From: Raja brachyura | Lineage: Eukaryota | Assembly: GCA_963514005.1 (NCBI GenBank) | Contig: OY740783.1 | Location: 129,890,001-129,954,000, forward strand | Direction of reading: 5' to 3' | DNA: 64,000 bases | Shown here: positions 583 to 52,201 of the stretch, one piece after another | Layout of the letters: every line of letters begins with the position of its first letter | Numbering within the stretch: position 1 is the first letter of the stretch | The notes under the pieces: model-generated | Told to the model about the DNA's origin: nothing | What the model saw: only the letters and a program-made list of their open reading frames with translations | Database searches by the model: none | Position numbers and translations under genes: made by a program

Positions 583-589
583 CATTTCA

Positions 590-5758: not shown

Positions 5759-6411
5759 AATAGACAATAGACAATAGGTGCAGGAGTAGGCCGTTCGGCC
5801 CTTCGAGCCAGCACCGCCATTCAATATGTTCATGGCTGATCATCCCCACTCAGTTCCCCGTTCCTGCCTTCTCCCCATATCCCCTATCTTTAAGAGCCCT
5901 ATCCAGCTCTCTCTTGAAAGCATCTAGAGAACCTGCCTCCACCGCCTTCTGAGGCAGTGAATTCCGCAAATTCACCACTCTCTGTGAGAAAAAGTGTTTC
6001 CTCGTCTCCGTTCTAAATGGCCTACCCCTTATTCTTAAACTGTGGCCCCTGGTTCTGGACTCCCCCAACATCGGGAACATGTTTCCTGCCTCTAGCGTGT
6101 CCAAACCCTTATATGTTTCAATGAGATTCCCTCTCATCTTTCAAAACTCCAGAGTGTACAAGCCCATTTGGCTCCATTCTCTCAGCCTATGACAGTCCCG
6201 CCATCCCGGGAATTAACCTTGTAAACCTACGCTGTACTCCCTCAATAGCAAGAATGTCCTTCCTCAAATTAGAGGACCAAAACTGCACACAATATTGCAG
6301 GTGTGGTCTCACTAGGGCCCTGTACAACTGCAGAAGGACCTCTTTGCTCCTATATTCGATTCCTCTTGTTATAAAGGCCAACATGCCATTCGCTTTCTTC
6401 ACTGCCTGCTG
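5759..6411 (-). mobile_element. CR1 3' fragment inserted into an opposite-strand CR1 fragment
   Basis: RPHLQYCVQFWS and FFSQRVVNL, (gacaata)n tail. The host + strand CR1 continues from 6412. Confidence 0.85.
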
Positions 6412-7099
6412 TAAGAAGTTGGTGAGGCTGCATTTGGAGTATTGTGTTCAGTTTTGGTCACCCTGCTGCAGGAACAATGCAGTTCAGCTAGAAAGAGTGC
6501 AGAGACGATTTACAAGGATGTTGCCGGGACTCAAGGGTCTGAGGTATAGGGAGGGGTTGGGCAAGCTAGGGCTTTAAACTTTGGAGTGCAGGAACCTGCG
6601 AGGTGATCTTATAGAGGTGTATTTTATGATGAGGGGAATAGATGGGGTGAATGCACAGAGTCTTTTACCCAGAATAGGAGGATCAAGAATTAAAGTTGAG
6701 AGGGGAAAGATTTAATTGGAACCCCGACAGGAGCAACTTTTTCACACAGTTGGAACGAGCTGCAAGAGAAGGAAGTTGAGGCAGGTATGCTAACGACTCT
6801 AAAAGGCGTGGACTGCTACATGGATGAGAAATGTTTAGCGGGATAAGGGCCAGGTGGGACTAGAATCATAGAGTGTGGAATCAGGTCCTTCGGCCCAATT
6901 TTCCCATGCTGACCAACATTCCCTGTCTACACTAGTCCCACCTGCCTGCATTTGGCCCATATCCCTCTAAACCTTCCCTATCCAAGTACCTGCCCAAATG
7001 CTTATTAAACGTTGCAGTTGTGCCTGTCTCACCTACCTGTGCTGTATGAGCCTTTGACTCTCTATTTAACCCCTTGCAGTGCCCTCTAATATACAGTTT

Positions 7100-7306
7100 T
7101 GCCTTTTCAATAAGAACCCTGAATTTGTCTCCCACGGTTACAATACAAAGACTCTCTCAGCCCACTACGAAATGACTTCCGGCAGTCTTCAACTAATTTC
7201 TGAGAGCTTAAAGGGAAATGAAGAAACACTCCGAGCGACTTCTGTATTTCAGCGACAAGGAGCTCACAGCAGTGGGTGCGGTGGACACCACACTGAAGTG
7301 TTGGCG
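7100..7306 (+). promoter_or_regulatory. Putative proximal promoter/5'UTR of the receptor gene
   Basis: Non-repeat island upstream of the ATG with an ETS core ACTTCCGG (~7176), an ETS/IRF-like GGAAATGAAGAAAC (~7213) and a RUNX site TGCGGT (~7277). Short motifs only. Confidence 0.4.
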
Positions 7307-7367
7307 ATGTGCTCTCTCCGAGTTTGTCTCTGCACCGTCCTGCTCTCCGTCTCAGTCCACGGTTACC
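7307..7367 (+). CDS. Exon 1, signal peptide [20 protein letters not shown]
   Basis: ATG in a gcgATGt context, 20-aa hydrophobic leader, phase-1 donor GTGAGT at 7368, in a non-repeat island. The link to exon 2 across 18 kb is inferred. Confidence 0.75.
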
Positions 7368-13300: not shown

Positions 13301-16300
13301 GTTTTTTACACCACTAGATGATCGCCCCTCAGCCTCCTGCGCTCCAAGGAATAGAGTCCTAGCCTGCCCGACCTTTCTCTACACCTCAGGCTCTCAAGTC
13401 GTGACATCATCCTTGTAAATCTTCCCTGCGCTCTTTCCAGCTGAAGGCATCCTTCCAGTATCAGGCAGACCATAATAGTGAGATTAAACGAGAACTTACC
13501 TGTTCGAAGTTTGATCTTTATTTTATGAGGAGTTACGATGAGGGATTACGTGAAGAAGCCCCGCCTGGCGCTGGATCAGCATACTTCAAAGCAGCGGCAT
13601 GAAAAACACAGAACCAATAGCCGGAGTAAAATAGTAAGGCTCAAAATAGACTAGAACTACCAGATGATCATTTATATTATGAGGGTTGGGAGTGGAGGGC
13701 ACGTAATCCCTCATCGTAACTCCTCATAAAATAAAGATCAAACTTCGAACAGGTAAGTTCTCGTTTAATCTCACTATTTTACTTCGGAGTCACGTGAGTG
13801 ACTACGTGAAGATTTTAAAGCTCTGTGTTTTCCATGTCGTAAATTCATTTCATACAACTCTCTGTTTGGTCAAAATAGTAGTGAGTAAAAAGTATTTTAA
13901 CACATTGTTATAATTTATGTAATAAGTCCTTTAATTATAAAAAAGAACAACTTTTTTAATAATAATAATAACCCCTCTATCGCAGGGGAAAATGACAAAA
14001 TAATTGATAAATTATGTCAATGGTAACATAAATCGATAATATAAATCGATAATATAAACAAAGCAAGCATTTAAAGAGAACCCAGTACTGCGTGTCCAAA
14101 TCCTGGCACCGTGACAACAGGTTTATTGTAGAACTTTGAAAAAGTTTCTTCTCTAGACCACCCTGCGGCCTCTAAAATTTGATCGAGTGGTACGTCCTGT
14201 ACCTTCGCCGCGGACGTAGCTGCCGCCCTAGTGGAGTGAGATTTAAACACATCAGTGTCTATTCCTGCTAGACCCAAAACCTGTTTTAACCATCTAGAAA
14301 TGGTTTGAACTGAAACTTTTGTATGTGGTTTTTTGTGTGTTATCAATAACGCTTTCTCAGAACCTCTGAGATTTTTGGTTAACTCCATGTATTGAGTTAA
14401 ATGCTTAACTACACACAATGTTTCATCAATAGGATATGCTTTAAACATTACCTTCATTCCAGTTCTCCCTGGTCTGCTTTGTTTGATTAAGTCATAAACA
14501 TAAAACACAATGTTATCTGAAGTCACATGCATGCAATCCAACCTTAACAATTGCAAAGTTTGTACTCTTTGAGCTGATACCAATGCCATTAACATAACCA
14601 CCTTGAATGTTAAGTTCTGCAAAGACATTGAATTAATTGGAGTCCATTGTTGAAGCAAAGTGAGAACAATACTAACATCCCAAATTTCTGTATATCTGGG
14701 CTTGGGAGGATTTTTATTAAAAATACCTTTCATGAATCGGGATACTAATGGGTGAGACCCAACTGAATCCCGATCCGAAATTTGTCCTAAATAGGATGAC
14801 AATGCACTCCGAGCACAATTAATGGCACTATAACTCAAATGCTCATCAAACTGTAACCCAGCAAGGAACTCCAATACATTTGAAATGTTTGCAGAATGAT
14901 AAGATATCTTTGACTGTGTACAAAAGGCTTCCCATTTCCTTATATGCGTCATATATTGTTTTTTAGTGCTAGTCCTCCAAGCTGCATCTATAACATCCAT
15001 GGTCCTGTCCGACAGTTCAAACTCTTGCAATGGTCTGGTCAGAACCTGCAGATTAACAAATTAATATGATCATGCAATGGATGAATTTCTTTTGTTACTG
15101 GTTGTGTCAACAGATTGTCGCAACTGGGAATTGTCATACATGGTTCAATAATCATTTCTAGCATCAATGGGAACCATGACTGCGTAGGCCAATTTGGCAC
15201 CACCAAAATGCCTTTGGCAGCGTCTTGCGCTATTTTCTTGAGACATTGCCCAATGAGACAGAATGGGGGAAAAGCATAAAAGAACATATTCCCCCAGTGT
15301 AGCGAGAAAGCATCCACCGCTACTGCCCCTGGATCGTGTTCCCAAGACACGTATTTCGGCAATTGGTGATTCAATCTAGATGCAAACAGATCAATGTCCG
15401 GTACTCCATACCGACTGACAATATTTTTGAAAATTTGTGGATTTAACATCCATTCTGTATTGTCTTTAAATATTCGTGATCTTTTGTCTGTCATAACATT
15501 GTCTCTCCCTGGGAGATAAATAGCTGAAAGCCCAATATTTTTTGCAATACACCATTGCCACATCTGGTTACCAGATGATCACATGAAATTGATCTGACAC
15601 CACCCATGTGATTGATATATGCCACAGCTGTGGTATAATCTATTTGTACTTGGACATGCAAATCCTTTAATGAAGAGCAATAAGCTTTTAATCCATAAAA
15701 TGCTCCCACTAGCTCCAAATAATTAATACCATATGTTTGGAGCAACAAATCCTCTTGGACAGCCCATCTGCCTCCACAGCTGGTCTCATTGTCCATAGCC
15801 CCCCATCCGAGAGAACTTGCGTCAGTTTGTAAAACCACGACTGGCTGATGAACTAAAATGTTCTTAGCAGCTTGTGGAACATTCTCAATCCACCAATGTA
15901 ATTCTGATAAAGCTTCCTTAGGCAATTGCATTGGCCTATCAAAATGGCCTGCTCGCTGAACTAGCGCTTTAGTTTTTGCCCTCTGAAGATTTTGGTAATG
16001 TAAACGACCAAATTCTACTGCTGGAAATGCTGCTACCAATTTACCAATACCCTTGGCAACCTCTCGGATGGAGGGATAAGGTTTGTTAAGCAGGTTTTGA
16101 CACACATTTGTCAAATCTAACTCCTTATCCATTAGTAAAGTTACCAACATAGTAACTGAGTTAATCACAAACCCCAGATATTCAATGGTTTGGGATGGCT
16201 GTAACTTAGACTTTGTTGGATGGATCAGAAAACCCAACTTCTCAAACAAGCTAATAGTTGCTGAGACTGATTTTCCAGCTGATTCCTGATTAGCATTGAC

Positions 16301-25300: not shown

Positions 25301-28300
25301 GTGTTTCTTCCCCTGTTGTTCTATTATTCACCTCTCTCTTCCCCCCTCTCTCTCTCTCCAGGCTTTTCGCACGATGGTTGGACAATGTCCGGTGCTGATG
25401 AGGTATCTGCGATGGAAGGGGCCTCTGCTGTGTTGCCGTGTACATTCACCTACCCACCCAATGGTGGCAACGTCACCGGCTCCGTGTTGTGGCACAACAA
25501 GTTGCCATTAGAGGCTCTCAGCCTTGTGTTTAAATGCACATATGCCGGTCCCGGCCGCCCCCGATGTGATGAAGTGACACAGAAGGCCGGAGGAGGTCGG
25601 TTCAAATTCGTGGGGAACCTCCCAGAGGGAGATGCCTCGATAATGGTGGAGCCGCTGAGAAAGAAGGACAGGAATAGTTACCGGTGCCGCGTGGAGCTCA
25701 CTGTTGGGGGTTTTCAATCTGTGATTCTCACGCAGCTGACTGTGGAAGGTGAGAACAATGTTCAGAAACTGTCGCTGCATCTTGTAGGGTCGGTGGGGGC
25801 GCTGCAAGCCGGCAGCCCCGTCAGCAGTGTGTTAGTCATTTCAACTTTTTTTATTTTTTTAGTGTGTTTTAAAGTGTGTTTTTTATGTTTCTTTGTGTGT
25901 CTTGTGTGGGGGGGATGAGGGGGAAACCGTTTCGGTCGCCTCCTTCACAGAGAGGCAACTTTTTCCAGGTCGCCTCCCGGTGGGCGAACAACAAGGATCG
26001 AGCGGCCTTTCCCGGAGACGCGCCCGGGGGTTCAGCGGCGGGCGCAGCGTGGACACTCGGCGGGGAGCAGGGGAGCAGGTGAGCCGTCGCCGGAGGGGAG
26101 CGCTCCGTTTCGCTGGTCCACGGCAGCCAGCAGCCTGAAGCCGCGGTCTGCAGAGCTCCAGCTGGCGCGGAGTCCGCAGCCTGGGATCCCCCCCGTTGGG
26201 AACCCGGGAGAAGAAGAAGCTCTCACCGCCGGCCCGCAGCCATCTTCTACCGCGGGCCCGGCGTGGACTAACCATCAGGAGTGGGGTCCCTCGCCTGGGA
26301 CCCCTGGAGGGGAGCTCCGACCGCCAGCCCTGCGGTCTGTGGTGCTTCTGGCTGCGGCGCGGCGGGAACTTTAAATCTTCGACCGCCGGCCTGCGGCCAA
26401 CACCAACCTGATGCCACGGTGTCTGGTGGGGAAGAGACGATTCTGGACTTACCTGGACTTTTACCTGCCTCGACATCTGGACGCCCGTAGCGGCGGCTGC
26501 GGAGGGTTGAGGTCCCGACCACGGGGGGAAATGGAGGAGGACTGGCCATTTTTTTTGCCTTCCACCACAGTGATGTATGCTGTGGTGGATGTTTGTGTTC
26601 AATTTTTAATGTGTTTTTGTGTGTTCTTTATCATTGTACCGCTGCTGACACATTCATTTCACTTGCACTTTGTGTGCAATGTGACGAATAAAACTGATTG
26701 ATTGATTGATTGTACAGTGAGTCATAGAGTTATACAGCATGGAAACAGGCCCTTCAGCCCAACTCATCCATGCTGACCCAGCTACACTAAACCGATTTGC
26801 CCATTATTTGACCCACATCCCTTTAAACCTTTTGTATCCGTGTGCCTGTCCAAATGTCTTTTAAATGTTGTTATAGTCCCTGCTTCAACTACCTCCTCTG
26901 GCAGCTCTCTCTATACATCCACCATGCTCTGTACCTTGAAGATTGAATACTCTAACCAAGTAGCCCTTGCATCCCCTCTCTCTCCATCCCTCCCCTACCC
27001 AAGCTTCAAAGTTGTCTTGTGTCTATCTTCAGAGTAAACCAGCATCAGGAACTGCAGATACTGGTTTACACTGAAGATAGACGTAAAATGCTGGAGTAAC
27101 TCAGCGGGACAGGCAGCATCTCTGGAGAGAAGGAATGGGTGATGTTTTTGGGTCGAGACACTTCTTCAGACAGAGTCAAGGGAGAGGGAGACACAAAGAT
27201 AATGAAGTGTAAGGTGTGAAAAGGAGACATCAAAGAGGATAAGTTCAAGGAAAATGTAAAATAGATCATTGTTAGCTAGAAGGAGGTGCCAATGTGCCGA
27301 AAGTCTTTTTGACCACCTTATCTACCTGCGACTCGACCTTCAAGGAACCATGCACCTGTACTCCAAGATCCCTCTGCTACACAACACTCCCCAGAGGCCC
27401 ACCATTCACTCTTCAGGTCCTGCCCTTGTTAGACTTCCCAAATTTAGAAAGGGCTGCAAGGAAAAGCCTGCAAACTACAATCCAATGAGCTTAACATATT
27501 TGGTAGGCAAGTTACTGGAGAGTATTCTGAGGTATAAGATATGTATTTGGATAGACAGGGACTGATTAAGGAGAGTCAGCATGGTTTTGTACGTGGGAGA
27601 TTGTCTCACAAATCAGATCGAGTTTTTTGGAGAGGCACCCAACAAGGTTGACGAGGCCAAATCCGTAAACGTTGCCTCTGTGGACTTCAGCAAGTCATTT
27701 AGTAAGGCTCCACTTGACAATAGACAATAGGTGCAGGAGTAGACCATTCAGCCCTTCGAGCCAGCACCGCCATTCAATGTGATCATGGCTGATCATCCAC
27801 AATCAGTACCCCGTTCCTGTATTCTCCCCATATTCCCTGACTCCGCTATCTTTAAGAGTCCTATCTGGCTCTCTTGAAAGTATTCAGAGAACCGACCTCC
27901 ACTGCCCTCTGAAGCAGAGAATTCCACAGCCTCACAACTCACTGAGAAAATGTGTTTCCTCGTCTCCATTCTAAATGGCTTACCCCTTATTCTTAAACTG
28001 TGGCCCCTGGTTCTGGACTCCCCCAACATCGGGAAAATATTTCCTGCCTCTAGCTTGTCCAAACCCCTAATAATCATATAGGTTTCAATAGGATACCCTA
28101 AATTCGAGGGTATACACGCCCAGCCGTTGCATTCTCTCAGCATATGACTGTCCTGCCATTCCGGGAATTAACCTTGTAAACCTTTGCTACACTCACTCAA
28201 TAGCAAGAATGTCCTTCCTCAAATTAGGGGACCAAAACTGCACACAATATTCCAGGTGTGGTCTCACTAGGGCCCTGTACAACTGCAGAAGGACCTCTTT

Positions 28301-34300: not shown

Positions 34301-37300
34301 GTCTTCCCCACTGAACATCTCCAGCCTTGGTCACTACCTCTACGCTTCTTCCATCACCTCATTCATCCCTCTCCTCACCAGGATCTATCTATCACTTGTC
34401 CAAAGTCTGAAGAAGGGTCTCCACCCAAAACATCACCCATTCCTTTTCTCCAGGGAAGCTGCCTGTCCTGCTGAGTTACTCCAGCATTTTGTGTCTACCT
34501 TCCATCTATCACTTGCCAGCTCTTGCACCACCACTCCCCTCACCTCTTTCTACAGCAATCTCCCCTCTACTCCGTCAGACTGAAGAAAGGAACCGATCCG
34601 AAAGGTCATCTGTCCATTTACCTCCCCGGATTGCTGGGGTCTTTTCACCACAACCCTCTGTCTATCAGTAAATTAGTTCTGAATCCAAATGGTCATGGCA
34701 CCATTAATCCTTCTGAGTCAGCCTACCATGAAGAGTGGCACGGTGGCACAGCGGTGGAGTTGCTGCCTCACAGCGCCAGAGACCCGGCTTCGATCCCGAC
34801 TACAGGTGCTGTCTGTTCTTTCGGTTTTTTCCGGGTGCTCAGATTTCCTGCCACACTCCAATAATCTGCAGGTTTGCAGGTTAATTGGCTTCTGTAAATT
34901 ATCCCTAGTGCGTGTAAGGTAGTGTTAAGCCCCTGTCCCACTTAGGAAACCTGAACGGAAACCTCTGGTGAGCTTGCCCGCGACGCAAGGTTTCCACGAG
35001 GTCGCCGGAGGTTTTGGTCACTCTCTCTAATGGTCGAAAGTGGTTTCCGCTTGGTCAAGGCTTCATCTAGGTTGCTTCGATTGTTTCAACAAAATCAAAA
35101 CCAGCCTCGACTAAAAATAGGTTGCTGTTTTAAAAATTAATAATTTTTTAGTCGCAGGTCTATTCGAAGCCGGTTTTCTTCACAGTCGAGGAAGGTTTTC
35201 AACATATGTGTGGGAGGTGGTAGAAGGTTGCAGGTCACCTCGACCTTGATTTTTTGTTTGGGTGGCGGGCAAGGTCTCCAGAGGTTGCTGTTTAGGTCTT
35301 GTCAGTGGGACAGGGGCTTAAAGGGGCTTAAAAGGTCTCCCGAGTGGGATGATTGCTGGTCGGCACGGACTCGGAGGGCCGAAAGTCCTGCTTCCACGCT
35401 GTATCTTTAAACTCAAATAGCATAAAAGATGCTGCCTGACCCGCTGAGTCCCTCCAGCACTTTCTTTTTTGCTGATGATTCCAGCATCTTCAGTTCCTTG
35501 AGTCTACAAGTTTGGCTGGTTGGGTTCTCTGGGGCAGTTTTTAAGCCTCGAATTTTTCCCCGATAAGTTGGTTGATTGCGGTCGGCGAGGTTCAACTGAT
35601 GCATTCCGGTGTCTGTCCTTCCCTCAGCGCCCGGCGGGAATGTCTCAGTGGTGACTGGGACTGTGGGAGGTTCGGCCACGTTACCCTGTGTGTATCAGCA
35701 ACCCCAGCGTTACCGCAGCGTCCTCACGGTCACATGGATGAGGAAGGATCCCTACCGACACATCGTCACGTTCACACACAAAGCTGATGGATCCTGGGCG
35801 GTGGAGAACGGAGCAACTCGGTTCGAGCTGGTCGGGGACCCAGAGCTGGGAAACGTCTCAACCAGGATAAACCAGCTGAGTGTGGAGGACAGTGACGGCT
35901 ACCAGTGTCTGGTGGAGTTCAGCAAACCGGAATACTACGATGCGACAAAGGACGTCGACGCACATTTGAGGAGCAGCGTACACCCCCCGTACACCCATCA
36001 GTACCAGCGTGAGGTCCGGCTCCAGGTCCAGCAGCCGCTCGCACCCGGTAAGAAACCATCGCCACGTTCTGCCGTGTGGAGCGAAGGTCAATAGTTTGCC
36101 TGAACCCCACCCCACCCCCACACATGTGCCGTTCAGTGTAGCTTCCTCTCCCGTGCCCGGACCCTTGCGCTGAATGCCGTGTGTGTCACTCCCAGAGTCA
36201 GACCGACTGACGGAGTCCGAACCAGTGAGTCGTTATTCATAGAGTTGTAGAGAGTCACAGAGTCCCAGGTCCTTCTGCCCATCTTGCCCACGCCGACCAA
36301 CATGCCCCATCAACACTAGTCCCGCCTGTCCACATTTGGCCCATATCCTTCTAAACTTATCCTCCCCAAGAACCTGTCTAAATGTCTCTTAAATGTTGCA
36401 AGAATCCCTGCCTCAACCACCTCCTCCTGCGGCTCTTTCCTTACACCCACCAATCTTTGTGTAAAAAAAGTTACCCCTCAGATTCCTATTAAATCTTTCC
36501 CGCCTCACCTTAAATCTATGTCAGGTGGTTCTGGATTCCCCAACTCTGGACAAAAGACTGTGTGTGTTTACCCGATCTATTCCTCTCATGATTTTTATAC
36601 ACCTCTATAAGATCGCCCCTCATCCTCCTGCGCTCCAAGGAATAATGTCCTAGCCTGCTCAACGTCTCCCTACAGCTCAGCATGTCAAGTCACATCCTTG
36701 GCAACACCCTTGTAAATCATCTCTGCATCCTTTCCAGCTTGACAGCATCGTTCAAGTTCAAATGTATTTGTCACGTGCACCATAAGGTGCAGTGAAATGT
36801 GATTTACCATGCAGTGTTACAATTAAAAAAGGACATAGTACACAATGTAATTCAACACACATCCACCACAGCATTCTTCACTGTGGTGGAAGGCAATACT
36901 GTTCAGACAGTCCCGTACATGGTGACCAAAACTGAACACAATATTCCAAATGTGGCCTCTCCTATGTCTTATACAACAGTAACATATCCTCCCAACTTCC
37001 ATACTCAATACTCTGACTGATGAAGACCAATGTGCCAAAAGCCTTTATGATCACCCTATCATCGGCTGATATTCAATCACGGCTGATCTGTCTTTCCCTC
37101 TCAACCCCATTCTCCTGCCTTCTCCCCATAACCCCTGATACCAAAACCAGTCAAGAATCTATGAATCTCCGCCTTAATAAATATTCATTGACTTGGCCCC
37201 CATGCCCGTCTGTGGTAATGAATTCCACAGATTCACTACCCTGTTACTCACGAAATATCGCCTCAACTCCTTCCTAAAGGTACATTATTTTATTCTCAGG

Positions 37301-40300
37301 CTATGGCCTCTGATCCCAGACTCTCCCACTAGTGGAAACATCATCTCCACATCCATTCTATCCAGGTCATTCACCATTCGGTGAGTTCCCCCCCTCATCC
37401 TCAACTCCAGCAAGTACAGACCCAGTGCCGTTCTAACGTTCATCATATGTTAACCCAATGAATAAGTTTATGAATGAATAAATGAATGAAGGAATTAGTT
37501 TATTGGCCAAGTATTCACATACAAAGAATTTGCCTTGGTGCTCCGCCCGCAAGTGACAACATGACATGCAGTGACAATTAAGAATGATACATAAAACATT
37601 AAACATTAATAATAAATAATTCCTGGGATCATTCTCTTAAACCCCCTCTGGACCCTTTCCAGAGCCAGCACATCCTTCCTCAGATATGGGGCCTAACATT
37701 ACTCACAATGCTCCAAATGCGATCTGACCAGTGCCTTGCAGAGCATTCCATCCCTGTTTTTGTATTATAGTCCTCTCAAAATAAATGCTAGCATTGCATT
37801 TTCCTTCCTTACTACCCATTCAACATGCGGATTAATGTTTTGGGAAACCTGCACCAACACTCCCAAGACCCTTTACATCTCTGGTCATTCAGTCAAGTCC
37901 AATGTCCGCTATGGTGTAGAGGTGACTCGGATAGTACCCTATCTCATGGAAGGACTGTTCAGACAGTGCATCTTATCCCTCAGAATACTGTCTCATAACT
38001 TTCTGACCACAGATAGTTAGACTCACAGCACTGTCATTCCCAGGATTTTCCCAGCCACCCTTCTTAAACAGAGGCACAACATTTGCCACCCTCCAGTCTC
38101 GTCATTTACGGCAGCACGGTGGCGCATCGGTAGAGTTACTGCTCTACAGTGCCGGAGACCCGGGTTCGATCCAGACTATGGGTGCTGTCTGAGCGGAGTT
38201 TGTACGTTCTCCCCGTGACCTGCGTGGGTTTTCTCCAAGATCTTTAGTTTCCTCCCCACACTGCAAAGACGTACAGGTTTGTAGGTTAATTGGCTTGGTA
38301 TAAATGTAAAACATTGTCCCTAATGTGTGTGTAGGACCGTGTTAATGATGTCCATGTGGACTCGACGGGACGAAGGGCCTGTTTCCACGCTGTATCTCTA
38401 AAATAAATAAAACTAAATTTAGATCATTTACCTTAATTCACAAGCAAGTTAGAAATGGCGTTCCCACATACGAGTTATTTGATGGATCATCATTGATCAT
38501 ATGTTAAGGCCGGGTGTGAACACATGGGCCTACTGATCTCCCGGTCTTCACTGCTCTTTTTTTACAGTGACACCAACAGTGACACCAACAGTGACATCAA
38601 CGTACATCCTGCTCATTCTGATTGCCCTCCTCATGCTCTGCATCCTGCTCATTATTATTCTCTGGAAGAAAGGAGGTGAGTTGACCTACAAATAAGCCAT
38701 TGCAATTCTCTGTCTGCTATCGATTATTATTGTTCCTTGCACCGGGATGCAGAGATCAGCTTTGCTTATGTGCTGGGGGTTACACAAAAAGCTGGAGAAA
38801 CTCAGCGGGTGCAGCAGCATCAAAGGAGCGAAGGAGATAGGCGACGTTTCGGGTCGAGACAGACAGCATTTTCTTCAGACAGCATTTGCTTATGTGCTAT
38901 CGTTTGTCTTTAATTGGACGTCGCACTTCACGCTGGCTCGGCAAGACCACCGGCATAATCAAGGACCGGTGGGTGGGGGGGGAGGAAGAGTGGGTGAGGG
39001 GGGGGGGGGGGGTGAGGGGGGGGGGGAAGTGGGTGAGGGTGGGGAGTGGGTGAGGGTGGGGAGTGGGTGAGGGGAGACAGTGTGTGAGGGGAGACAGTGT
39101 GTTGGGGGGGGAGAATGGGTGTGTGAGGGGGGGGAGTGGGTGAGGGGGAGCAAGTGGGTGAGGGGGGGGAGTGGGTGAGGGGGGAGAGTGGGTGAGGGGG
39201 GGGGAAGAGTGGGTGGGGGGGAGTGGGTGAGGGGTTGGAGATTGCCTTTGGGCTGTAACTTTGATGAATCTTTATTATTCTACATTTGTTATACAATGTG
39301 GATGTCAGCCATTACCTTAATCTTTTCTCATCTCTTTATTCCTGCAGTGTTTTCATCCGTAATGAGGTCAGCCACATTTTCAAAAAGGTAAGAGGGGACA
39401 TGAATCCAAGGCTAAGCGGGGTGGCACGGTGGCGCAGCGGGTAGAGCTGCTGCCTCACAGCGCCAGAGACCCGGGTTCGATCCTGACTACGGGTGCCGTC
39501 TGTACGGAGTTTGTACGTTCTCCTCGTGACCGCGTGGGTTTTCTCCGGGTGCTACGGTTTCCTCACACACTCCAAATACGTACGGCGTTGTAGGATAATA
39601 GGCTTCTCTGCATTGTAAATTGTCCCTAGTAGAGTGAGTAGGATAGTGCTCGTGTACTGCCGATCGCTGGTCGGTGCTGACTCGCTGGGCCGAAGGGCCT
39701 GTTTCCACGCTGTGTGACTAAACTAAAGTGTAAAGTCTAGCATCGCACATTTCCACACTGGGTAAAAAGGTTTTGACAGTCTACCATATCCATACCTCTC
39801 ATTATTGTACATCATACAGGTGTATGGGTTTGTAGGTTAATTGGTTGGTAAAATTGTAAACTGTCCCTACTGCGTAGGGTAGTGCTAGTGTACAGCATGG
39901 ACTCGGTGGGCCGAAAGGCCTGTTTCCGCACTGTATCTCCGAAGTAAAATTTCATATACTCACTGTGGTAAGCACCCTCTGAGATCTGTGGTGTGAGCAG
40001 GAAGTTGAGATGCGCGGATTGCCATGAGATTTCCTGGGCGTTTGATGCAATTTCCTCACGTTGGTTCCTCTCTCTGTAGGAGCGCTGTGAGTCCGGATGT
40101 CACTGGCCGAGGGGCACAGCTGCAGTGTGATTCAGGTACTGAGCGAGCACCTTCTACCCTGCCCAAGGCAGCAAGCAGACCAAAACCAACAGGAGGGCTG
40201 CAGGTAGCAAATGGAGGGTGGAGACAGTACGGGACTGCACACGAGGAAATGCAGATGCTGGTTTGCAAAATAAAATACACAAAGTGCTAGAACAACTGAG

Positions 40301-43300
40301 GCGGCACAGTGGTGCAGCATTGGAGTCGCTGCCTTACAGTGCCAGAGACCCGGGTTCGATCCTAGCTACAATGCTGCCTGTACTGAATTTGTGCGTTCTC
40401 CCCGTGACCGTGTGGGTTTTCTCCATGTGTGTAATTATACCCCTAAAGCTTAACCCCCTTTAGTCTCGTTCAGTAAAACAGTGAGTTAAACGCCAGATCA
40501 CTATTCTTTATTCTTTTCAACAATAGCAAACTCCCTCTACAATGCCTAACCACCGCGGGTCCATTCCTTGTCTCTGCTCATTTAAGCCCTTCAGCCCCGT
40601 GTAAGCGGACACCTCCAAAGGTTTACGCAGTCCAGAGCGCCCCTCCAGAAGATCGACTCCAATCCTCGTGGGGTCCACTCTTTTATAGGTCATCTTACCC
40701 TGTGGCGCCCCTACAAACCAATCACAAATATTGATTACATTGTACAGTTATTGACAGTTCCCTAAACCAATTACAAAGTTCCACATTACAATGTTTCAAC
40801 AGAAGCTTCTGGAAGGAAGTCAGTTCACTAAAGTAATGCAACACTTTCCCCGGTAGTATAAACATTTCAAAGAAGGTTTCACACAACAACCTGGGTTGTG
40901 GGGTCAATTCTCAAGGCTCTGAGAGCAAGGATAAGTTTAATGGGAAGAGGGACTAGCACCGACTTGATGGGTGTATTCCTTGAGAGGATTCTATGATGTG
41001 GAACTCATTGCCACAGACGGTGATGGAGGCCAAGACATCGGGTATTTTTAAGGTAGAGATCGACAGTCTCTTGACAGTACAGGTGCCAAAGGTTATGGGG
41101 AGAAGGCAGGAGAATGTGGTTCAGAGGGAAAGATAGATCAGCCATGATTGAATTGTGGAGTAGACTCGATGGGCCGAATGGCCTATTTCTGCTTCTATCA
41201 CTTATGAAATTATGATTCTCTTGAGAGGAATAGTGTAAATACAGTCTTTTACCCCAACTGGGGAATCGAGAACCAGAGGACAAAGGTTTAAGTTCAGAGA
41301 GGAAGGACTTAATAGGAATCTGAGGGGCAATTTTTATACATAGCGGGTGCTGGGTGTGTGGAACGAGCTGCCAGAGGAGGTAGCTACTATCATAATGTTT
41401 AAAATAAGATTTGGACAGGTACATGAATAGGAAAGGTGGGACTAGTATAGAAGTGGGCATGTTGGGCCGAAGGGCCTGTTTCCACTCTGTATCATTCTAA
41501 GACTGATTGGTGTTACAGAGCGTGACAATAATGTGGTATCCAACAGCGACGAGGTAGGTGAACATTAGCACCTTATTTTGAGTCAGAGCTGTGATCTAAT
41601 TTGTGTTCCAAGCTTGGTCGGGCAACCCAGAGAACATCTCCCCACACATTAACACCATCCTACACACACCATCCTTCGCCTACCGAGGTCGCGTCGACCA
41701 GCGATCACCCTGTACGCTAGCACTATCTTACACACTGGGGACAATTTACAATTTTACCAACCAACCTAATCAAGAATATACTAATCTTCACCATAGACAT
41801 ATCGACTGACTTGCCCCTCACATACCCCCCCTCAGCGGGTCAGGCGTCATCCCTGGAGAACACGGATGGGTAACGGTCCAGGTTAGGATCCCACTGAAGG
41901 TTCAGGCTCAGGTTTATTATTGTCATGTGTACCGAGGTACGGTGAAAAGCTTTAGCTTTGCGTGCTGTCCAGAACGTAAGTGAGTAAGTTTATTGGCCAA
42001 GTATTCACATACAAGGAATTTGCCTTGGTGCTCCGCCCACAAGTAACAACATGACATACAGTGACAGTTACGATTGATTCAGAAAACACAAAACATTAAT
42101 AATAATTAAACATTAATGATAAAACACCTGAGTCTGAAGAAGGGTCTCGACCCGAAACGTCGCCTATCTCCTTCGCTCCTTAGATGCTGCTGCACCCGCT
42201 GAGTTTCTCCAGCTTTTTGTGTAACCCAATGATAAAACACCATTGATCAAGCATGTGAACCAACAAAATACCAGATCAAAGGGAGGCTACAGATTTTTGG
42301 CTGTTAAGTAGAGCAACTACTTGTGGATAAAAACTGTGTTTATGTCTGGCTGTGGCAGCTTTGACAGTCCGGAGTTGCCTTCCAGAGGGAAGTGATTCAA
42401 AGAGTTTGTGGCCAGGGTGAGAGGGGTCAGAGATGATCTTGCCCGCTCGCTTCCTGGCCCTTGCAGTGTACAGTTCATCAATGGAGGGAAGGTTGCAGCC
42501 AATAACCTTCTCTGCTGATCGGACGATTCACTGCAGCCTCCGGGTGTCGTGCTTGGTGCCTGAGCCAAACCAGACCATGATGGAGAAGGTGAGAACAGAC
42601 TCTACGATTGACCTGTAGAATTGGACCATCATTACATGTGGCAGATTGTGCTTCCTCAGCTGCCGTAGGAAGTACATCCTCTGTTGTGCCTTTTTGACTG
42701 TGGAGTCGATGGTCACCCCCCACTTAAGGTCCTTGGAGATGATGGTTCCCAGGAACTTAAAGACTCCACAGATGTGACTGTGGTGTTGTTGATGGTGATT
42801 GGGGTGAGGGGAGGGGGAGCTCTTCTAAAGTCTACAATCAATTCCATTGTCTTAAGAGCATTGAGCTCCAGGTTGTTGCGAAGGCACCAGGACGCCAGCT
42901 GTGACACTCAGCTCAAATACAATCAGTTGAAGCTCAAGTGCAATAGGCAGAGCTAAGGGGAAGATACAGAGTGCAGAACCCTTGAGGTCGGCTGCAGGCA
43001 CAAAGGCGGGTGGGTGAGGAGATGGACGGGGCATCCAAGAAAGGAGACGGCTGGAGGCCCACAACAGCCTGGGACTCGCCTGGAACAGGCACCGCTCATC
43101 TGCACTGGAGCGTGGACTCTGGAAATGGCACCAAAACATGGCGCCTCTTGCATGCGGGGTCAGTAGACTGTTTCTGTACACTTGCTAATCAAGGCAATAC
43201 TCTACTGGAGTGTATGTAAGTTAGAGAATTTCACCGTGTTAGCACTTCACACATGTAATAATAAAAGCACCATTGAATATAGTTCAGCATTGTAGTTCAT

Positions 43301-46300
43301 CAGTTCCTTACAAGAAGGGTCCCAAGTGCTGGTTAACAAAAAAGAGACACTTAGTGCTGGAGTAACTCAGCGGTTCAGGCAGCTTCTCTGGAGATCAAAG
43401 CTATTTAGGGGCAGCACATGGTGGTGCAGCTGTAGAGTTGCATCCTCACAGCGCCAGAGACCCGGGTTCCATCTTGATTATGGGTGCTGTCTGTACAAAG
43501 TTTGTCCGTTCTCCCTGTGACCACACACGTGGTTCAGGAGCCTACTTCAGATACTTCGGGTTGGGGCCAGAGCTGAAACGTCACCTATCCACATTCTCCA
43601 GAGATGCTGCCTGACCCGCTGAGTTACTCCAGCACTCTGTGAAACGTCACCTATCCATGTTCTCCACAGATGCTGCCTGACCCGCTGAGTTACTCCAGCA
43701 CTCTGTGAAACGTCACCTATCCATGTTCTCCACAGATGCTGCCTGACCCTCTCTCTCTCCCTCTCCCTCGTTTGAAGGAGTAACTCTCGTGTGCTTTACA
43801 GATCAGGCTGAGTCCAGCACGTACGCCAGCATTATCATCAACAGTGGAAAAGCGAAGAAGCCGCAGGCAGATGATGAAGGTACACACCTTGCTCACAGTC
43901 ATAGAGTGATACAGCGTGGAAACAGACCGCTTGGCCCAACTAGCCCACACCGGCCAACATGTTCCAGCTACACTAGTCCCACCTGCCCATGTTTGGTCCA
44001 TATCCCTCCAAACCTGTCCTAAAAAATGGGTTCCAATCCCACTTCTGACACCATGTTGAGTGATGACCAAACAATAACAGAAGGCTTGCACCAAGATAAA
44101 GATCCAAAGACTTTATTAACTACATAGCAAGCATGACTTCACACTTCCACGTTCAACTTACAATAAAGGAATCCAGCGTGCAGTTATAACTGAAAAGCTA
44201 GTGGGCGTAACTACATGACTCATGAAATGAGTGACACTAATCTACACCCATGTACCTGTCTGAATGTTTCTTAAATGTTGGGATAGTCCCAGCCTCAACT
44301 ACCTCCTCTGGCAGCTCGTTCCATACACCCACCACCCTGTGTGTGAAAAAGTTACCCCTCAAATACCTATTAAATCTTTTCCCCTTCACCTTCAACCTAT
44401 GTCCTATGGTCCTTGATTCACCAACTCTGGGCAAGAGACTCCGTGCGATTACCCGATCTATTCCTCTCAACACCAAGTCCCACATCCCTCACAGTTCGAC
44501 TGGTTGACTAATGGCACATTCTCCTTTACCTCCAGGTGCGCAGAAACCTGAAGCTGCAAACTCAGGTGAGAATGATTCTGTTCCTACTTTACGTTAGTTG
44601 AGTTTAGAGATACAGCGTGGAAACAGGCCCTTCCGCTCACCGTGCCCGCACCGACCAGCGATCCCCGCACATTAACACTACCCTACACTAGGGGACAATT
44701 TTTACATTTAGACCAAGCCAGTTAACCTACAAGCCTGTACGTCTTTGGAGGGTGGGAGGAAACCGAAGATCTCGGAGAAAACCCACGCAGGTCACGGGGA
44801 GAACGTACAAACTCCGTACAGACAGAACCCATAGATGAGCTCGAACCTGGGTCTCCAGCGCTGCATTCACTGTAAGGCAGCAACTCTACCGCTGCGCCAC
44901 CGTGACTTTAGAGATACAGCGTGGAAATGGGCCCTTTGGCCCACAGAGTCCGTGCCAACCAGCGATCACCCTGTACGCTAGCACCATCTTACACACTAGG
45001 GACAATTTACAATCTGACCAACCAACCTAATCAAGAACATATTAATCTCCACCATAGATATATCGATCGACTTGCCCTCCCCCAGCCGTCTATGGCAATG
45101 AATTCCACAGATTCACTACCCTCTGACACATGTCTCTTTCTATTCATGTGTGTGTCTGTAAATTACTGTGTCAAGATTTCACTTATTCACGGGAACAGCA
45201 ATCAGATCAGGTAAAGTGTTGGCACAAGGAACTGCAGATGCTGGTTTACAAACAAGTGCTGGATTAACTCAGTGGGTCAGGCGTCATCCCTGGAGAACAC
45301 GGATGGATAACATTTCCGGTCAGTTCCCACTGAAGGTTCAGGCTCAGGTTTATTATTGTCATGTGTACCGAGGTACGGTGAAAAGCTATGGCTTTGTGTG
45401 CTTTCCAGAACGTAAATATAATCAGTTGAAGCTCAAGTGCAATAGGCTGAGCTAAGGGGAAGATACAGAGTGCAGAGCACTTGAGATCGACTGCGGGGAA
45501 CAAAGGCGGGCGGGCGAAGTGAGGGACGGGGCATCCAAGGAAGGAGACGGCTGGAGGCCCACAACAGCCTGGGACTCACCTGGAACAGGTTCCTAGCATC
45601 TGCACTGGCGCATGGACGCTGAAAATGGTGGGCTGGCAGTTGACTCACGGCTATTCCTTGAAATTCCATTTCAAGCAGGGTGCAAGGCCACCAAATTCCA
45701 GTGCAGTTTCTTACCACTTCAAGCAGTGTGCAAGGCCACCAAATTCAAGTGCAGTGTCATACAACTTCAAACAGGGTGCAAGGCCACCAAATTCAAGTGC
45801 AATTTCATACCATTTGAAGCAGGCTGCAAGGCCACTAAAGACAGCAAGTCGTGACCTCTCCCTCCTCCATCGTGCAGAGACTGAGCCACGCCCACACTTC
45901 TGGGTTTTATAGTCCCTTCCCCCCTCCCATCAGAAGGGGCATGGCCTTCATGGTGTGATTGACAGGAGAGAGACTCTCAACATTTTTTAAACACTAATAA
46001 CTTTTATTTTTCACCGATGGGAAAAGTCTTTGGCACCTGATGAGCGGAGGGGGACTCAGAGTAAGTTGGCCAAAAATCACAGCCATACGTGGTAGCGTTT
46101 TTTCTAAAATCAATGTAAAGCGCAAACAGGAAGTGGTCAAGATTAGACTTTTAATTATAGAGAAGGCAAGGCAACTTTAATTAGGCAAGGCAACTTTAAG
46201 TAGGCAAGGGAACTTTAATTAGGCAAGGCAACTTTAATTAGGCAACACAGCTTTAGCATTGCCAAACCAAAGGCAACACAGCGCTAGCATTTCCAAACCA

Positions 46301-49300
46301 AAGGCAACACAGGTTTAGCATTTCCAAACCAAAGGCAACACAGCCTTCGCATTTCCAAACTATATTTTCAAACCACATTAAGGGCACTGACAGGTCAGTA
46401 AAACCACTCACAGTTTAGTAGACATGTGTTCAGTGTTATTCACAGCTCAGACTGAGAGACGTGACCCTCTCGCTCCCACATCTTGCAGAGACTGACTGAG
46501 ACATTCAACACTTCCGTGTTTTATAGTCCCTTCAGAAGGGGCATGGCCTTCAGAGGAGAAAATCTCAACATTTTTAAAACACTGATAACTCTTTTATTTT
46601 TCATCGATGGGAAAAATCCTCTTGTCCTGCGCAGCGGAGGGGAACTCTGAGTAAGATGGCCAAAAATCACAGCCGTAAGTGGCAGTGTTTTTTCTAAAAT
46701 CAATATACAGAACAACAGGAAATGGTCAAGATCAGACATTTAGTAATATCGATGTTCTCCAGAGATGCTGCCTGACCCGCTGAGTTACTCCAGCACTCTG
46801 TGAAACGTCACCTATCCATGTTCTCCACAGATGCTGCCTGACCCGCTGAGTTACTCCAGCACTCTGTGAAACGTCACCTATCCATGTTCTCCACAGATGC
46901 TGCCTGACCCGCTGAGTTACTCCAGCACCTTGGCTCGTGTATATGCGCCTCTCTCTCTCTCTGTAGTTTGAAGGAGTAACTCTCGTGTGCTTTACAGATC
47001 AGGCTGAATCCTGCACGTACGCCAGCATTATCATCAACAGTGGAAAAGTGAAAAAGCCGCAGGCAGATGATGAAGGTACACACCGTGCTCACAGTCATAG
47101 AGTGATACAGCGTGGAAACCATGTTGAGTGATGACCAAACAATAACAGAAGCCTTGCACCAAGATAAAGATCCAAAGACTTTATTAACTACATAGCAAGC
47201 ATGACTTCACACTTGCACGTTCAACTTACACTAAAGGAATCCAGCATGCAGTTATAACTGAAAAGCTAGTGGGCGTAACTACAGAAGCATGACTCATGAA
47301 ATGAGTGACACTAATTTACACCCATGTACCTGTCTGAATGTTTGTTAAATGTTGGGATAGTCCCAGCCTCAACTACCTCCTCTGGCAGCTCGTTCCATAC
47401 ACCCACCACCCTGTGTGTGAAAAAGTTACCCCTCAAATTCCTATTAAATCTTTTCCCCTTCACCTTCAACCTATGTCCTACGGTCCTTGATTCACCACCT
47501 CTGGGCAAGAGACTCTGTGCGTCTACCCAATCTATTCCTCTCAACACCAATTTCCACATCCCTCACAGTTCGACTGGTTGACTAATGGCACATTCTCCTT
47601 TACTTCCAGGTGCGCAGAAACCTGAAGCTGCAAACTCAGGTGAGAATGATTCTGTTCCTACTTTACGTTAGTTGAGTTTAGAGATACAGCGTGGAAACAG
47701 GCCCTTCCGCTCACCGTGCCCGCACCGACCAGCGATCCCCGCACATTAACACTACCCTACACTAGGGGACAATTTTGACATTAAAGGGCCCGTCCCACAT
47801 GGCCATCATTTGCGCGCCATTAACGCGATCTGGTAGCCTGTGGGTAACGTGGGACGGGCGCATGGAGTGACGTGGAGGAGTGTGGATCCAGATCCGCCGC
47901 ATTCCTACTCCCAGAGCGGGGTCAAGACGATTGAAGATCGACACAAAATGCAGGAGTAACTCAGCGGGACCGGCAGCATCTCTGGAGAGAAGGAATGAGT
48001 GGCGTTTTGGGTCGAGACCCTTCTTCAGACTGAAAAAGAGTCTTGACCAGAAACATCATCCATCTTCAAATGACGTCACGCGCTCCAGACGGCTGTGCGG
48101 GCACATGATGACGCGTGTCAGTCACTACCTGTCACGTAAATGACGGCCAAGTGGGACAGGCCCTTTAGACCAAGCCAGTTAACCTACAAACCTGCACGTC
48201 TTTGGAGTGTGGGAGGAAACCGAAAATGTCAGAGAAAACCAACGCAGGTCACGGGGAGAATGTAGAAACTCCGTACAGATAGCACCCATAGTCGAGATCG
48301 AACCCGGGTCTCGAATCCATTCAGCCCTTCGAGCCATTCAATATGATCATGGCTGATTATTCAAAATCAGTACCCCGTTCCTGTTTTCTCCCCGTATACC
48401 TTGATTCCATTAGCCCTAAGAGCTATATCTGACTCTCTTGAATATATCCAGTGAATTGGCCTCCACTGCCTTCATAGATTCACAACTCTCTGGGTGAAAA
48501 AGCCTTTCATCTCAGTCCTAAATAGCCAACCCCTTATTCAAGCGAATACAAGCCCAGTCGACCCATTCTTTCGTCATATGTCTGTCCCACAATCCCAGGA
48601 ATTAACCTGGTGAACCTAAACTGCACTCCCTCAACAGCAAGAATGTCCTTCCACAAATTAGGAGACCAAAATTGCACACAATACTCCAAGTGCGGTCTCA
48701 CCTGGGTCCTGTACAACTGCAGTAGGACCTCCTTGCTCCGAAACTCAAATCCTCTCTCAATAAAGGCCCACATGCCAGTAGCTTTCTCCACTGCCTGCTG
48801 TACCTGCATGCTTACTTTCAGTGACTGATGTACAAGAACACCCAAGTCTCATTGCACCTCCACTTCTCCTAATCTGGCACCATTCAGATAATAATCTGCC
48901 TTCCTGTTTTTGCCACCAAAGTGGATAACCTCATATTTATCCACATGATACTGCATTTGCCATGCATCTGCCCACTCAGTCAACCTATCCAAGTCACCCT
49001 GCAGCCTCATAGCATCCTCCTCGCAGCTCACACTGCCACCCAGATTTGTGTCATCCGCAAACTTGGAGATGTCACATTTAATTCCCTCGTCTAAATTGTT
49101 AATATATATTGTAAATAACTGGGTCCCAGCACTGAGCCTTGCGGTACCGCACTGGTCACTGCCTGCCACTCTGAAAAGGACCCGTTAATTCCTATTCTTT
49201 GCTTCCTGCCTGCCAACCAGTTCTCTATCCATGTCAATACCCTACCCACAATACCATGTGCTCTAATTTTACCCACTAATCTCTTGTGTGGGACCTTGTC

Positions 49301-52201: not shown

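What the first reader, a model, noticed from the sequence alone, without database searches (positions are those of the whole stretch)
7307..52201. Inhibitory tandem-V Siglec-15-like receptor: a new domain architecture for the family
Seen: 11 phase-compatible exons give SP-V-V-TM-tail with STYASI, CTYASI and VIYAAV, and the TM has no charged residue. Established: canonical Siglec-15 is V+C2 with a TM lysine that recruits DAP12 (activating), and Siglecs carry a single N-terminal V domain. Inference: this is a cartilaginous-fish Siglec-15 offshoot in which the V exon was duplicated, C2 was lost and signalling polarity was switched to inhibitory. It could be the inhibitory half of a paired-receptor system. 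The ORF track shows only fragments of it.
Basis: partly seen in the sequence, partly recalled or inferred. Interest (0 to 1): 0.9.

Follow-up and report, generated by a model that had tools for sequence, protein, structure and literature searches.

The report
Inhibitory two-V Siglec-15-like receptor gene
This is an intact skate gene for an immune receptor with two V-type Ig domains, an uncharged membrane anchor and three inhibitory tyrosine motifs; it is real, but unnamed orthologues are already in public annotations of many sharks and rays, next to activating twins that NCBI calls Siglec-15.

Summary
Eleven exons on the + strand (7307-52201), all with AG/GT borders, join into one 1323-nt frame of 440 aa. 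The product reads signal peptide, V1, V2, an uncharged TM, and a tail whose only three tyrosines sit in STYASI, CTYASI and VIYAAV.

It aligns end to end (72-73%) with NCBI models from two skates, Amblyraja radiata XP_032874362.1 and Leucoraja erinacea LOC129695285. These have the same exon order.

Both V domains hit Siglec-15 best among solved structures by sequence. V1 keeps the key Arg and the extra Cys pair, and its model superposes best on Siglec-15.

- V-V without C2 is not special to this gene. All sampled elasmobranchs have it, in ITIM forms and in TM-lysine forms.
- V2 is an old, separate clade, not a fresh copy of V1.
- The V-domain tree neither proves nor rejects V1 as a Siglec-15 V.
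- Two-V Siglecs are already known (Siglec-12).

No transcript evidence could be obtained for this genome. I found no paper on the family. First-stage notes of this scan report similar V-V genes, activating and inhibitory, elsewhere in this genome; I did not test them.

Verdict: a real gene, a new variant of a known kind, of moderate interest.

The parts
7307..7367 (+). Exon 1: start codon and signal peptide ([20 protein letters not shown] plus 1 base); donor GTGAGT
   Evidence: Sequence. It is 80-90% identical to the leaders of the family.
25362..25748 (+). Exon 2: V1, a V-set domain of 129 codons, phase 1-1. It keeps the Arg equivalent to human Siglec-15 R143, the Trp equivalent to W44, the canonical Cys pair and the extra Cys pair. 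One NVT site.
   Evidence: AF2 model has pLDDT 85.7 and its top PDB fold hit is Siglec-15 7zoz.
35628..36047 (+). Exon 3: V2, a V-set domain of 140 codons, phase 1-1. It has Leu in place of the Arg, only the canonical Cys pair, and a long F-G insertion. Two NVS sites.
   Evidence: AF2 model has pLDDT 85.9 and a V-set fold, with VSIG4 and nectin on top and 7zoz at rank 15.
38568..38675 (+). Exon 4: short Thr/Pro/Val stalk, uncharged TM helix, then KKG stop-transfer
   Evidence: It is 73% identical to the Leucoraja orthologue TM exon.
39348..39387 (+). Exon 5: membrane-proximal tail ([13 protein letters not shown]), ending in phase 2
40080..40135 (+). Exon 6: tail ([18 protein letters not shown])
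   Evidence: It is 89% identical to the orthologue.
43802..43879 (+). Exon 7: first ITIM exon (STYASI, Tyr365)
44536..44565 (+). Exon 8: 10-codon spacer exon ([10 protein letters not shown]). It is present in Amblyraja XP_032874362.1 and Leucoraja isoform X1 and skipped in Leucoraja X2, so it may be optional.
46998..47075 (+). Exon 9: second ITIM-like exon (CTYASI, Tyr401)
47610..47639 (+). Exon 10: second copy of the 10-codon spacer exon
52167..52201 (+). Exon 11: C-terminal canonical ITIM (VIYAAV, Tyr433) and stop codon
43574..48312 (+). Tandem duplicate of the module 'ITIM exon plus spacer exon'. 43574-44855 matches 46801-48312 at 88-96% nucleotide identity, introns included.
   Evidence: Both modules are also in the Amblyraja and Leucoraja orthologues, where they differ more from each other.

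Best explanation
The window holds one intact 45-kb gene. It is the orthologue of Amblyraja radiata LOC116971354 and Leucoraja erinacea LOC129695285.

It encodes a type I membrane receptor of about 440 aa: signal peptide, a Siglec-15-like V domain (V1), a second and older V-set domain (V2), a very short stalk, an uncharged TM helix, and a 116-residue tail with three ITIM-type tyrosines.

It belongs to an elasmobranch-wide multigene family. The same V-V ectodomain is combined either with a Lys-bearing 'PLGxK' TM and a short tail (activating type, the one NCBI names Siglec-15) or with a neutral TM and ITIMs (this gene).

Likely mechanism:
1. V1 binds a ligand, probably a sialoglycan, through the conserved Arg.
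2. A Src-family kinase phosphorylates Tyr365, 401 and 433.
3. SHP-1/SHP-2-type phosphatases dock there.
4. They damp ITAM signalling, including that of the DAP12-type activating paralogues.

Shown here: gene structure, domain types, motifs, orthology, and the existence of both receptor types in related species. Inferred: ligand, phosphorylation, phosphatase recruitment, cell type, and expression in this animal.
For: Gene structure: 11 exons with AG/GT borders and one open frame.

Orthology: end-to-end alignment at 73% and 72% identity to XP_032874362.1 and LOC129695285, with the same exon order, both ITIM modules included. In the V-domain tree, V1 is sister to the two skate inhibitory V1 domains (100/88*), and V2 sits inside the skate V2 clade (98/83*).

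V1 is Siglec-15-like:
- PDB sequence search puts Siglec-15 first at E 2.1e-12, against 1.2e-07 for the next hit (Siglec-8).
- The AF2 model's top fold hit is 7zoz, TM 0.81, 32% identity.
- The Arg and both Cys pairs align with R143, C64-C142 and C95-C104 of human Siglec-15 (PMC10264397).
- The Arg is kept in 21 of 24 family V1 domains. All three losses are in members I classed as activating (two have a TM Lys on record).

V2 is a V-set domain, not C2.

Inhibitory signature: neutral TM, and three Tyr that all lie in ITIM-like motifs. The CTYAS[IL] and V[IT]YA[AE]V motifs are conserved from skates to bullhead, hound and carpet sharks.

Pairing: activating and inhibitory members of one species have 66-86% identical ectodomains. 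In Leucoraja and in Amblyraja the two models share one longest-contig length and have neighbouring LOC numbers, which points to one chromosome. The activating TM motif PLG[LIMV]K matches the LG.K of bird, teleost, frog, lungfish and mammal Siglec-15.
Against: - There is no transcript evidence for this genome. No RNA run is on record. The one read-laying run showed no exon-exon joints and looked like genomic DNA swamped by repeats.
- The orthologue models are automatic predictions, and I could not inspect their RNA support.
- V1-only isoforms that skip V2 are annotated in stingrays, Narcine, Heterodontus and Hemiscyllium. V2 may therefore be optional here too.
- CTYASI has Cys at position -2, outside the textbook ITIM consensus.
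- Siglec-15 ligand contacts other than W44 and R143 (Y87 and the G-strand RYE stretch) are not conserved in V1. Sialic-acid binding is therefore plausible but unproven.
- The tree does not place V1 with canonical Siglec-15 V with any support.
Confidence: 0.75

Rival explanations
1. This gene is a lineage-specific offshoot of a canonical V+C2, TM-Lys Siglec-15. Its own V exon was duplicated, C2 was lost and the signalling polarity was switched, giving an architecture new to the family.
For: V1 and V2 both hit the Siglec-15 V domain best in the PDB by sequence. No C2 exon is in the window. Related V-V-C2 proteins exist (lungfish Siglec-15 X2, Heptranchias P0048), so C2 loss at some point is plausible.
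Against: The V-V, no-C2 ectodomain is shared by TM-Lys and ITIM members in every elasmobranch sampled. V1 and V2 are only 27-30% identical and form separate starred clades that each span sharks and rays. Holding V1+V2 as an exclusive clade costs 15.5 lnL (p-AU 0.065). The same full-length architecture is already annotated in other species.
Confidence: 0.12
2. The main product is a single-V receptor (SP-V1-TM-ITIM). V2 is a cassette exon that is often or mostly skipped.
For: V2 is a phase 1-1 exon, so skipping it keeps the frame. V1-only isoforms are annotated in Hypanus, Hemitrygon, Narcine, Heterodontus and Hemiscyllium (P0017, P0018, P0022, P0036, P0025).
Against: The two skate orthologues are annotated with V2 in all listed isoforms. 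V2 is well conserved: 79% identity to the nearest skate V2, with 16 invariant columns across the family. That argues for use.
Confidence: 0.2
3. It is Siglec-like by descent only. The ectodomain recognises a protein or non-sialylated ligand, as many V-set paired receptors do.
For: Apart from W44 and R143, the ligand-contact residues named for human Siglec-15 are not conserved, and the F-G region is shorter. The position of V1 relative to Siglec-15 V is unresolved in the tree. Close V-set neighbours by fold include non-lectins such as P0 and VSIG4.
Against: The Arg is kept in all inhibitory members sampled and lost only in members I classed as activating. That pattern is typical of paired Siglecs. 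The top sequence and fold hits are Siglec-15 and then sialoadhesin.
Confidence: 0.3
4. The gene is a silent or decaying copy in a large multigene family.
For: No RNA evidence was found. Introns are packed with transposons, including an apparently intact DIRS-like element. The branch leading to the window's V1 is rather long (0.30).
Against: All 11 exons are open, all 20 splice dinucleotides are canonical, and all structural Cys/Trp residues and all three tail motifs are intact.
Confidence: 0.07

Closest known systems
Canonical Siglec-15 (human, bird, frog, teleost)
   Same: V1 shares the F-strand Arg (R143), W44, the canonical disulfide and the unusual second disulfide (C95-C104). It gives the best sequence and fold match to 7zoz. 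The activating paralogues of the family share the LG.K TM motif with Siglec-15.
   Different: The second domain is V-set, not C2. The TM has no Lys, so no DAP12-type pairing is expected. The tail is long, with three ITIM-type tyrosines, rather than short and non-ITIM (PMC6941304). Phylogenetic grouping of V1 with Siglec-15 V is not demonstrated.
Public gene models XP_032874362.1 (Amblyraja radiata LOC116971354) and XP_055488062.1/063.1/065.1 (Leucoraja erinacea LOC129695285 X1-X3), all 'uncharacterized protein'
   Same: Same exon order and domain order, 72-73% identity end to end, same two ITIM modules and the same C-terminal EVIY..VVTSR.
   Different: A different species, or possibly a different paralogue. 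In the window the two ITIM modules are almost identical to each other (2 of 26 residues differ). In Amblyraja 7 of 26 differ. This points to recent homogenisation here.
Siglec-12 (two V-set domains, ITIM tail)
   Same: A Siglec with two N-terminal V-set domains and inhibitory signalling (PMC6288428). NCBI names several shark and salamander relatives 'Siglec-12-like'.
   Different: Siglec-12 is a CD33-related Siglec with C2 domains after the two V domains. Shark CD33-like Siglec V domains lie on a long separate branch from V1 and V2. This gene has no C2 at all.
Paired Siglecs (Siglec-5/14, Siglec-11/16) and PILR alpha/beta
   Same: The logic is the same: near-identical ectodomains joined to opposite signalling modules, and loss of the essential Arg in some activating partners (PMC6288428).
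   Different: Different V-domain lineage. PILR beta scores only E 0.18 against V1, and PILR-like rows sit in another clade. The activating partner of this particular gene is not in the window.

Membership tests
Canonical Siglec-15 | N-terminal V-set domain with the essential F-strand Arg (human R143) | tested here: met
   V1 has YRCRVEL aligned to human YFCRVEF. The Arg is present in 21 of 24 family V1 domains.
Canonical Siglec-15 | Second intradomain disulfide C95-C104 besides C64-C142 | tested here: met
   All four Cys align. They are invariant or nearly so in the family. The feature is described in PMC10264397.
Canonical Siglec-15 | Second extracellular domain is C2-set | tested here: not met
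   Exon 3 is V-set (Pfam E 9.6e-13). Every one of the 42 PDB fold matches printed (ranks 1-50) is a V-type domain. No C2 exon is in the window.
Canonical Siglec-15 | TM lysine (human K274) for DAP12 pairing | tested here: not met
   The TM is [21 protein letters not shown], with no charge. No PLGxK-type exon is in either strand of the window.
Canonical Siglec-15 | V domain groups with Siglec-15 V domains in a tree | tested here: inconclusive
   The V1 clade is unresolved (55/41). The canonical Siglec-15 V clade sits weakly nearer V2 (80/78). The AU test does not reject V1 + Siglec-15 as one clade (p 0.256).
Canonical Siglec-15 | Binds sialylated glycans | not testable with these tools
   Needs binding assays.
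Elasmobranch V-V Siglec-15-like receptor family, inhibitory branch | SP-V1-V2-neutral TM-tail with CTYAS[IL]-type and C-terminal V[IT]YA[AE]V motifs; V1 and V2 fall in the family clades | tested here: met
   Full-length alignment. The V1 clade has support 99/99* and the V2 clade 100/99*, and the window's domains sit inside the skate subclades.
ITIM-bearing inhibitory receptors (functional class) | Neutral TM plus at least one (S/I/V/L)xYxx(I/V/L) motif in the tail | tested here: met
   STYASI and VIYAAV fit the consensus. CTYASI is a near match.
ITIM-bearing inhibitory receptors (functional class) | Phosphotyrosine-dependent recruitment of SHP-1/SHP-2 or SHIP | not testable with these tools
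   Needs pull-down or a signalling assay.
Paired activating/inhibitory receptor system | An activating partner with a highly similar ectodomain in the same genome, usually linked | tested here: inconclusive
   Met in related species: Leucoraja 77% and Heterodontus 85% identical ectodomains, pointing to the same chromosome. No partner is in this 64-kb window. Only untested first-stage notes place TM-Lys V-V genes 0.89 Mb before and 3.5 Mb beyond this window on the same piece.
pIgR/CD300/MDIR-type V receptors (considered) | V domains closest to pIgR/CD300/TREM | tested here: not met
   pIgR does not appear in the V1 list. For V2 it scores E 5e-06 to 1e-05, weaker than Siglec-15 at 7.5e-09. No hit carries an MDIR name. 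Skate MDIR sequences themselves were not compared.

The most novel reading that the evidence does not exclude
Siglec-15 is treated in the literature as a lone, conserved activating Siglec. It may descend from an ancient paired system of two-V receptors in early jawed vertebrates. Elasmobranchs would have kept both halves, TM-Lys and ITIM, and expanded them. Teleosts and amniotes would have kept only a V-C2 activating form. Salamander 'Siglec-12-like' two-V ITIM proteins, whose V domains group with Siglec-15 V (87/78), could be leftovers of the inhibitory half. This gene would then be a living example of the lost inhibitory partner of Siglec-15.
Probability: 0.3. Interest if true: 0.6.

Novelty: new variant of a known kind. 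Interest (0 to 1): 0.4.

Why it matters
Siglec-15 is a drug target in bone disease and cancer, and it is described as conserved through vertebrate evolution as an activating V-C2 receptor. In cartilaginous fishes its nearest relatives form a multigene family with two V domains, no C2, and both activating and inhibitory members. That changes the picture of how this Siglec lineage began. It also offers natural Arg-plus and Arg-minus, activating and inhibitory variants for studying ligand-driven evolution of paired receptors.

For annotation, the family has no consistent name. NCBI calls its members uncharacterized, pIgR-like, HAVCR1-like, CD33-like, sialoadhesin-like, JAML-like, or Siglec-10, -12 or -15.

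The single gene in this window adds one more member. It is not a new architecture.

Tried and rejected
- RNA evidence. The run search with the V2 exon found no run on record as RNA. Laying four runs on 35600-41599 at 85% likeness was swamped by intronic repeats. It showed no joint at any exon border and had perfect-match contigs in introns, so the runs look like DNA. This gives no verdict on expression.
I did not test synteny, exon-versus-intron conservation or linkage of the activating partner in Amblyraja.
- A C2 exon, a third V exon or a Lys-TM exon in the window: none found by tblastn with 25-230 family proteins or by motif scan.
- Literature. Seven searches found nothing on an elasmobranch Siglec-15-like V-V family. 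The library lacks most subscription journals, so this is weak evidence of absence.
- MDIR/pIgR/CD300 reading: rejected on hit ranking only.
- PILR reading: rejected (E 0.18; separate clade).
- Flanks 1-7300 and 52200-64000 hold only repeat-derived ORFs. No second receptor gene is there.
- Findings search by words found nothing. By genome it gave leads only.

Full report
**What is in the sequence.** The window is vertebrate DNA with long, repeat-filled introns. Reading the sequence around them, and using family proteins as guides, I placed 11 exons on the + strand:
- 7307-7367: leader
- 25362-25748: V1
- 35628-36047: V2
- 38568-38675: stalk and TM
- 39348-39387 and 40080-40135: tail
- 43802-43879: STYASI
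- 44536-44565: 10-codon spacer
- 46998-47075: CTYASI
- 47610-47639: second spacer
- 52167-52201: VIYAAV and stop

All internal borders are AG/GT. The exons sum to 1323 nt and give 440 codons with one terminal stop. Nine introns are phase 1 and one (exon 5/6) is phase 2. The TM helix has no charged residue. The tail has only three tyrosines, each in an ITIM-type motif.

A note on method. I built the joined model only inside scripts from window.fa and compared it locally with proteins already fetched. I did not send it to any database, fold or complex tool. All such searches were made exon by exon, by reference.

**Orthologues and family.** Three searches found a large family confined, among the strong hits, to sharks, skates and rays: V1 by word index, V1 against 1.84 billion representatives, and the Leucoraja protein P0028. 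The joined model aligns end to end with Amblyraja radiata XP_032874362.1 (433 aa, 73%) and Leucoraja erinacea LOC129695285 (72%), both 'uncharacterized protein'. Leucoraja X2 skips the first spacer exon, and X3 skips the whole first ITIM module. No protein of the window itself appeared in the database, so this copy seems unannotated.

**Two kinds of family member.** One kind ends in a TM of the type IPLGLKT... with a Lys and a tail of 11-17 residues. [quoted passage not shown] The other kind has a neutral TM and a long tail with CTYAS[IL]-type motifs and a C-terminal V[IT]YA[AE]V. Both kinds carry the same V1-V2 ectodomain and no C2. Within a species the two kinds are 66-86% identical over the ectodomain. 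In Leucoraja and Amblyraja the two models share one longest-contig length and have neighbouring LOC numbers, which points to one chromosome. V1-only isoforms are also annotated in several species.

**What the V domains are.** Both exons pass Pfam's V-set cut-off.
- V1: against all PDB sequences the best hit is human Siglec-15 (7zoz, E 2.1e-12). Next are Siglec-8 (1.2e-07), CD33, TIM-3 and sialoadhesin. The alignment puts V1's Arg on R143, its Trp on W44, and its four Cys on C64-C142 and C95-C104. These are the features that the crystal-structure paper singles out (PMC10264397). The other named ligand contacts (Y87 and the G-strand RYE stretch) are not conserved.
- An AF2 model of V1 (pLDDT 85.7) superposes best on 7zoz (TM 0.81, 32% identity), then on sialoadhesin.
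- V2: its best PDB sequence hit is also the Siglec-15 V domain (7.5e-09), but by a small margin. It has Leu or Gln in place of the Arg in all 21 family members examined. Its model (pLDDT 85.9) is a plain V-set fold closest to VSIG4 and nectin, with 7zoz at rank 15. It is not a C2 domain.

**Tree.** I built a careful ML tree of 69 V domains.
- The window's V1 is sister to the two skate inhibitory V1 domains (100/88*).
- All family V1 domains form one clade (99/99*), and all V2 domains another (100/99*).
- The V2 clade is sister to the second domains of two other elasmobranch receptors (100/99*). One of these (Heptranchias P0048) is V-V-C2-TM-ITIM.
- The canonical Siglec-15 V domains (mammal, bird, frog, teleosts, lungfish) group weakly with salamander two-V proteins and then with V2 (80/78). 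The position of V1 is unresolved (55/41).
- Forcing V1 + Siglec-15 V together is not rejected (p-AU 0.256). Forcing V1+V2 as an exclusive clade is disfavoured but not rejected (p-AU 0.065).
- In several lineages the activating and inhibitory domains of one species or genus cluster together (Heterodontus, Mobula, skate V2). This is the pattern expected from gene conversion or recent duplication in paired receptors.
- The lungfish 'Siglec-15 X2' is V-V-C2-TM(Lys). Two V domains ahead of a C2 may therefore be old, and C2 loss in this family is plausible.

**The Arg.** It is present in 21 of 24 V1 domains. The three losses (Rhinoraja, Narcine, Hemiscyllium) are all in members I classed as activating; a TM Lys is on record for the first two. 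Every inhibitory member keeps the Arg. The sample is small, but the direction is the one known from mammalian paired Siglecs (PMC6288428).

**The tail.** The module 'ITIM exon plus spacer exon' occurs twice. The two copies with their introns are 88-96% identical at nucleotide level. Their ITIM exons differ in 2 of 26 residues, against 7 of 26 in Amblyraja. Two ITIM exons are also present in stingrays and sharks. The duplication is therefore old, and the near-identity here points to recent homogenisation.

**Transcripts.** I could not test them. No run on record as RNA holds the V2 exon. The single read-laying run (35600-41599, four runs, 85% likeness) was dominated by repeats, showed no joints at exon borders, and had perfect contigs in introns, so the runs look like genomic DNA.

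**How it most likely works.** It is an inhibitory cell-surface receptor.
- V1, at the tip, binds the ligand, most likely a sialoglycan held by the Arg. I put this at about 50-60%.
- V2 acts as a spacer or second binding surface. It has a long batoid-specific F-G insertion.
- After ligand engagement the three tail tyrosines are phosphorylated and recruit SHP-type phosphatases.
- These oppose ITAM signals from DAP12-type partners of the TM-Lys paralogues.
- Only the architecture and motifs are shown. The rest is inferred from how ITIM receptors and paired Siglecs work (PMC6288428, PMC6941304).

**Comparison and novelty.** It fails two defining features of canonical Siglec-15, the C2 domain and the TM Lys (PMC6941304). 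It should therefore not be filed as Siglec-15. It is a Siglec-15-like inhibitory paralogue. Two-V Siglecs (Siglec-12) and paired Siglecs are known kinds. The exact architecture is already present in public automatic annotation of many elasmobranchs, without a name. Seven literature searches found no description of it; the library is incomplete.

**Elsewhere in this genome.** First-stage notes of this scan report further V-V genes, with and without TM Lys, on the same and other pieces. I used them as leads only.

**Verdict.** The gene is real and the reading 'inhibitory V-V Siglec-15-like receptor' is right. The claim of a new architecture and the proposed order of events are not supported. Interest is moderate.

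Noticed in passing
window 14071-18174, minus strand (intron 1): A DIRS-like retroelement with three long open frames: tyrosine recombinase (319 aa, Phage_integrase E 6e-09), reverse transcriptase (808 aa, RVT_1 E 2e-20) and a 229-aa upstream ORF. It looks recently active.
   Followed up: partly
window 28193-30331 and 48534-50699, minus strand: Broken LINE copies (reverse transcriptase and endonuclease pieces) in introns 2 and 10.
   Followed up: partly
window 32599-33003 and 19034-19868, plus strand: Two related repeat copies. The ORF at 32599-33003 carries a GIY-YIG nuclease motif (Penelope-like element); the copy at 19034-19868 was not searched. Both lie in the sense orientation of the gene's introns.
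   Followed up: partly
window 59731-63381, plus strand: An AT-rich (GC about 0.30) L1-like LINE with long open frames (140, 523, 135 and 289 aa), downstream of the gene.
   Followed up: no
window 35906-36020 (V2 F-G region): A long insertion between strands F and G of V2, about 20 residues more than in sharks. It is conserved in skates (..[14 protein letters not shown]..) and shorter in stingrays. It is modelled as a loop with a short helix at lower confidence (pLDDT 67-72).
   Followed up: partly
window 21779-22277: A tandem 16-codon repeat array (..[13 protein letters not shown]..) open in several frames on both strands. It looks like a minisatellite inside a repeat element in intron 1.
   Followed up: no
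window 35838-36028, run X6: Contigs about 90% like the V2 exon lie at depth 35-55. Unique intron sequence of the same run lies at about 3. This means either many near-identical V2 copies in the genome or expression of paralogues in that run. I could not tell which.
   Followed up: no
proteins P0040/P0053 (salamanders) and P0043 (lungfish): Bony-vertebrate relatives also carry two Siglec-15-like V domains. The salamander 'Siglec-12-like' models have CTYADI and VTYAVV tail motifs. The lungfish 'Siglec-15 X2' is V-V-C2-TM(Lys).
   Followed up: partly
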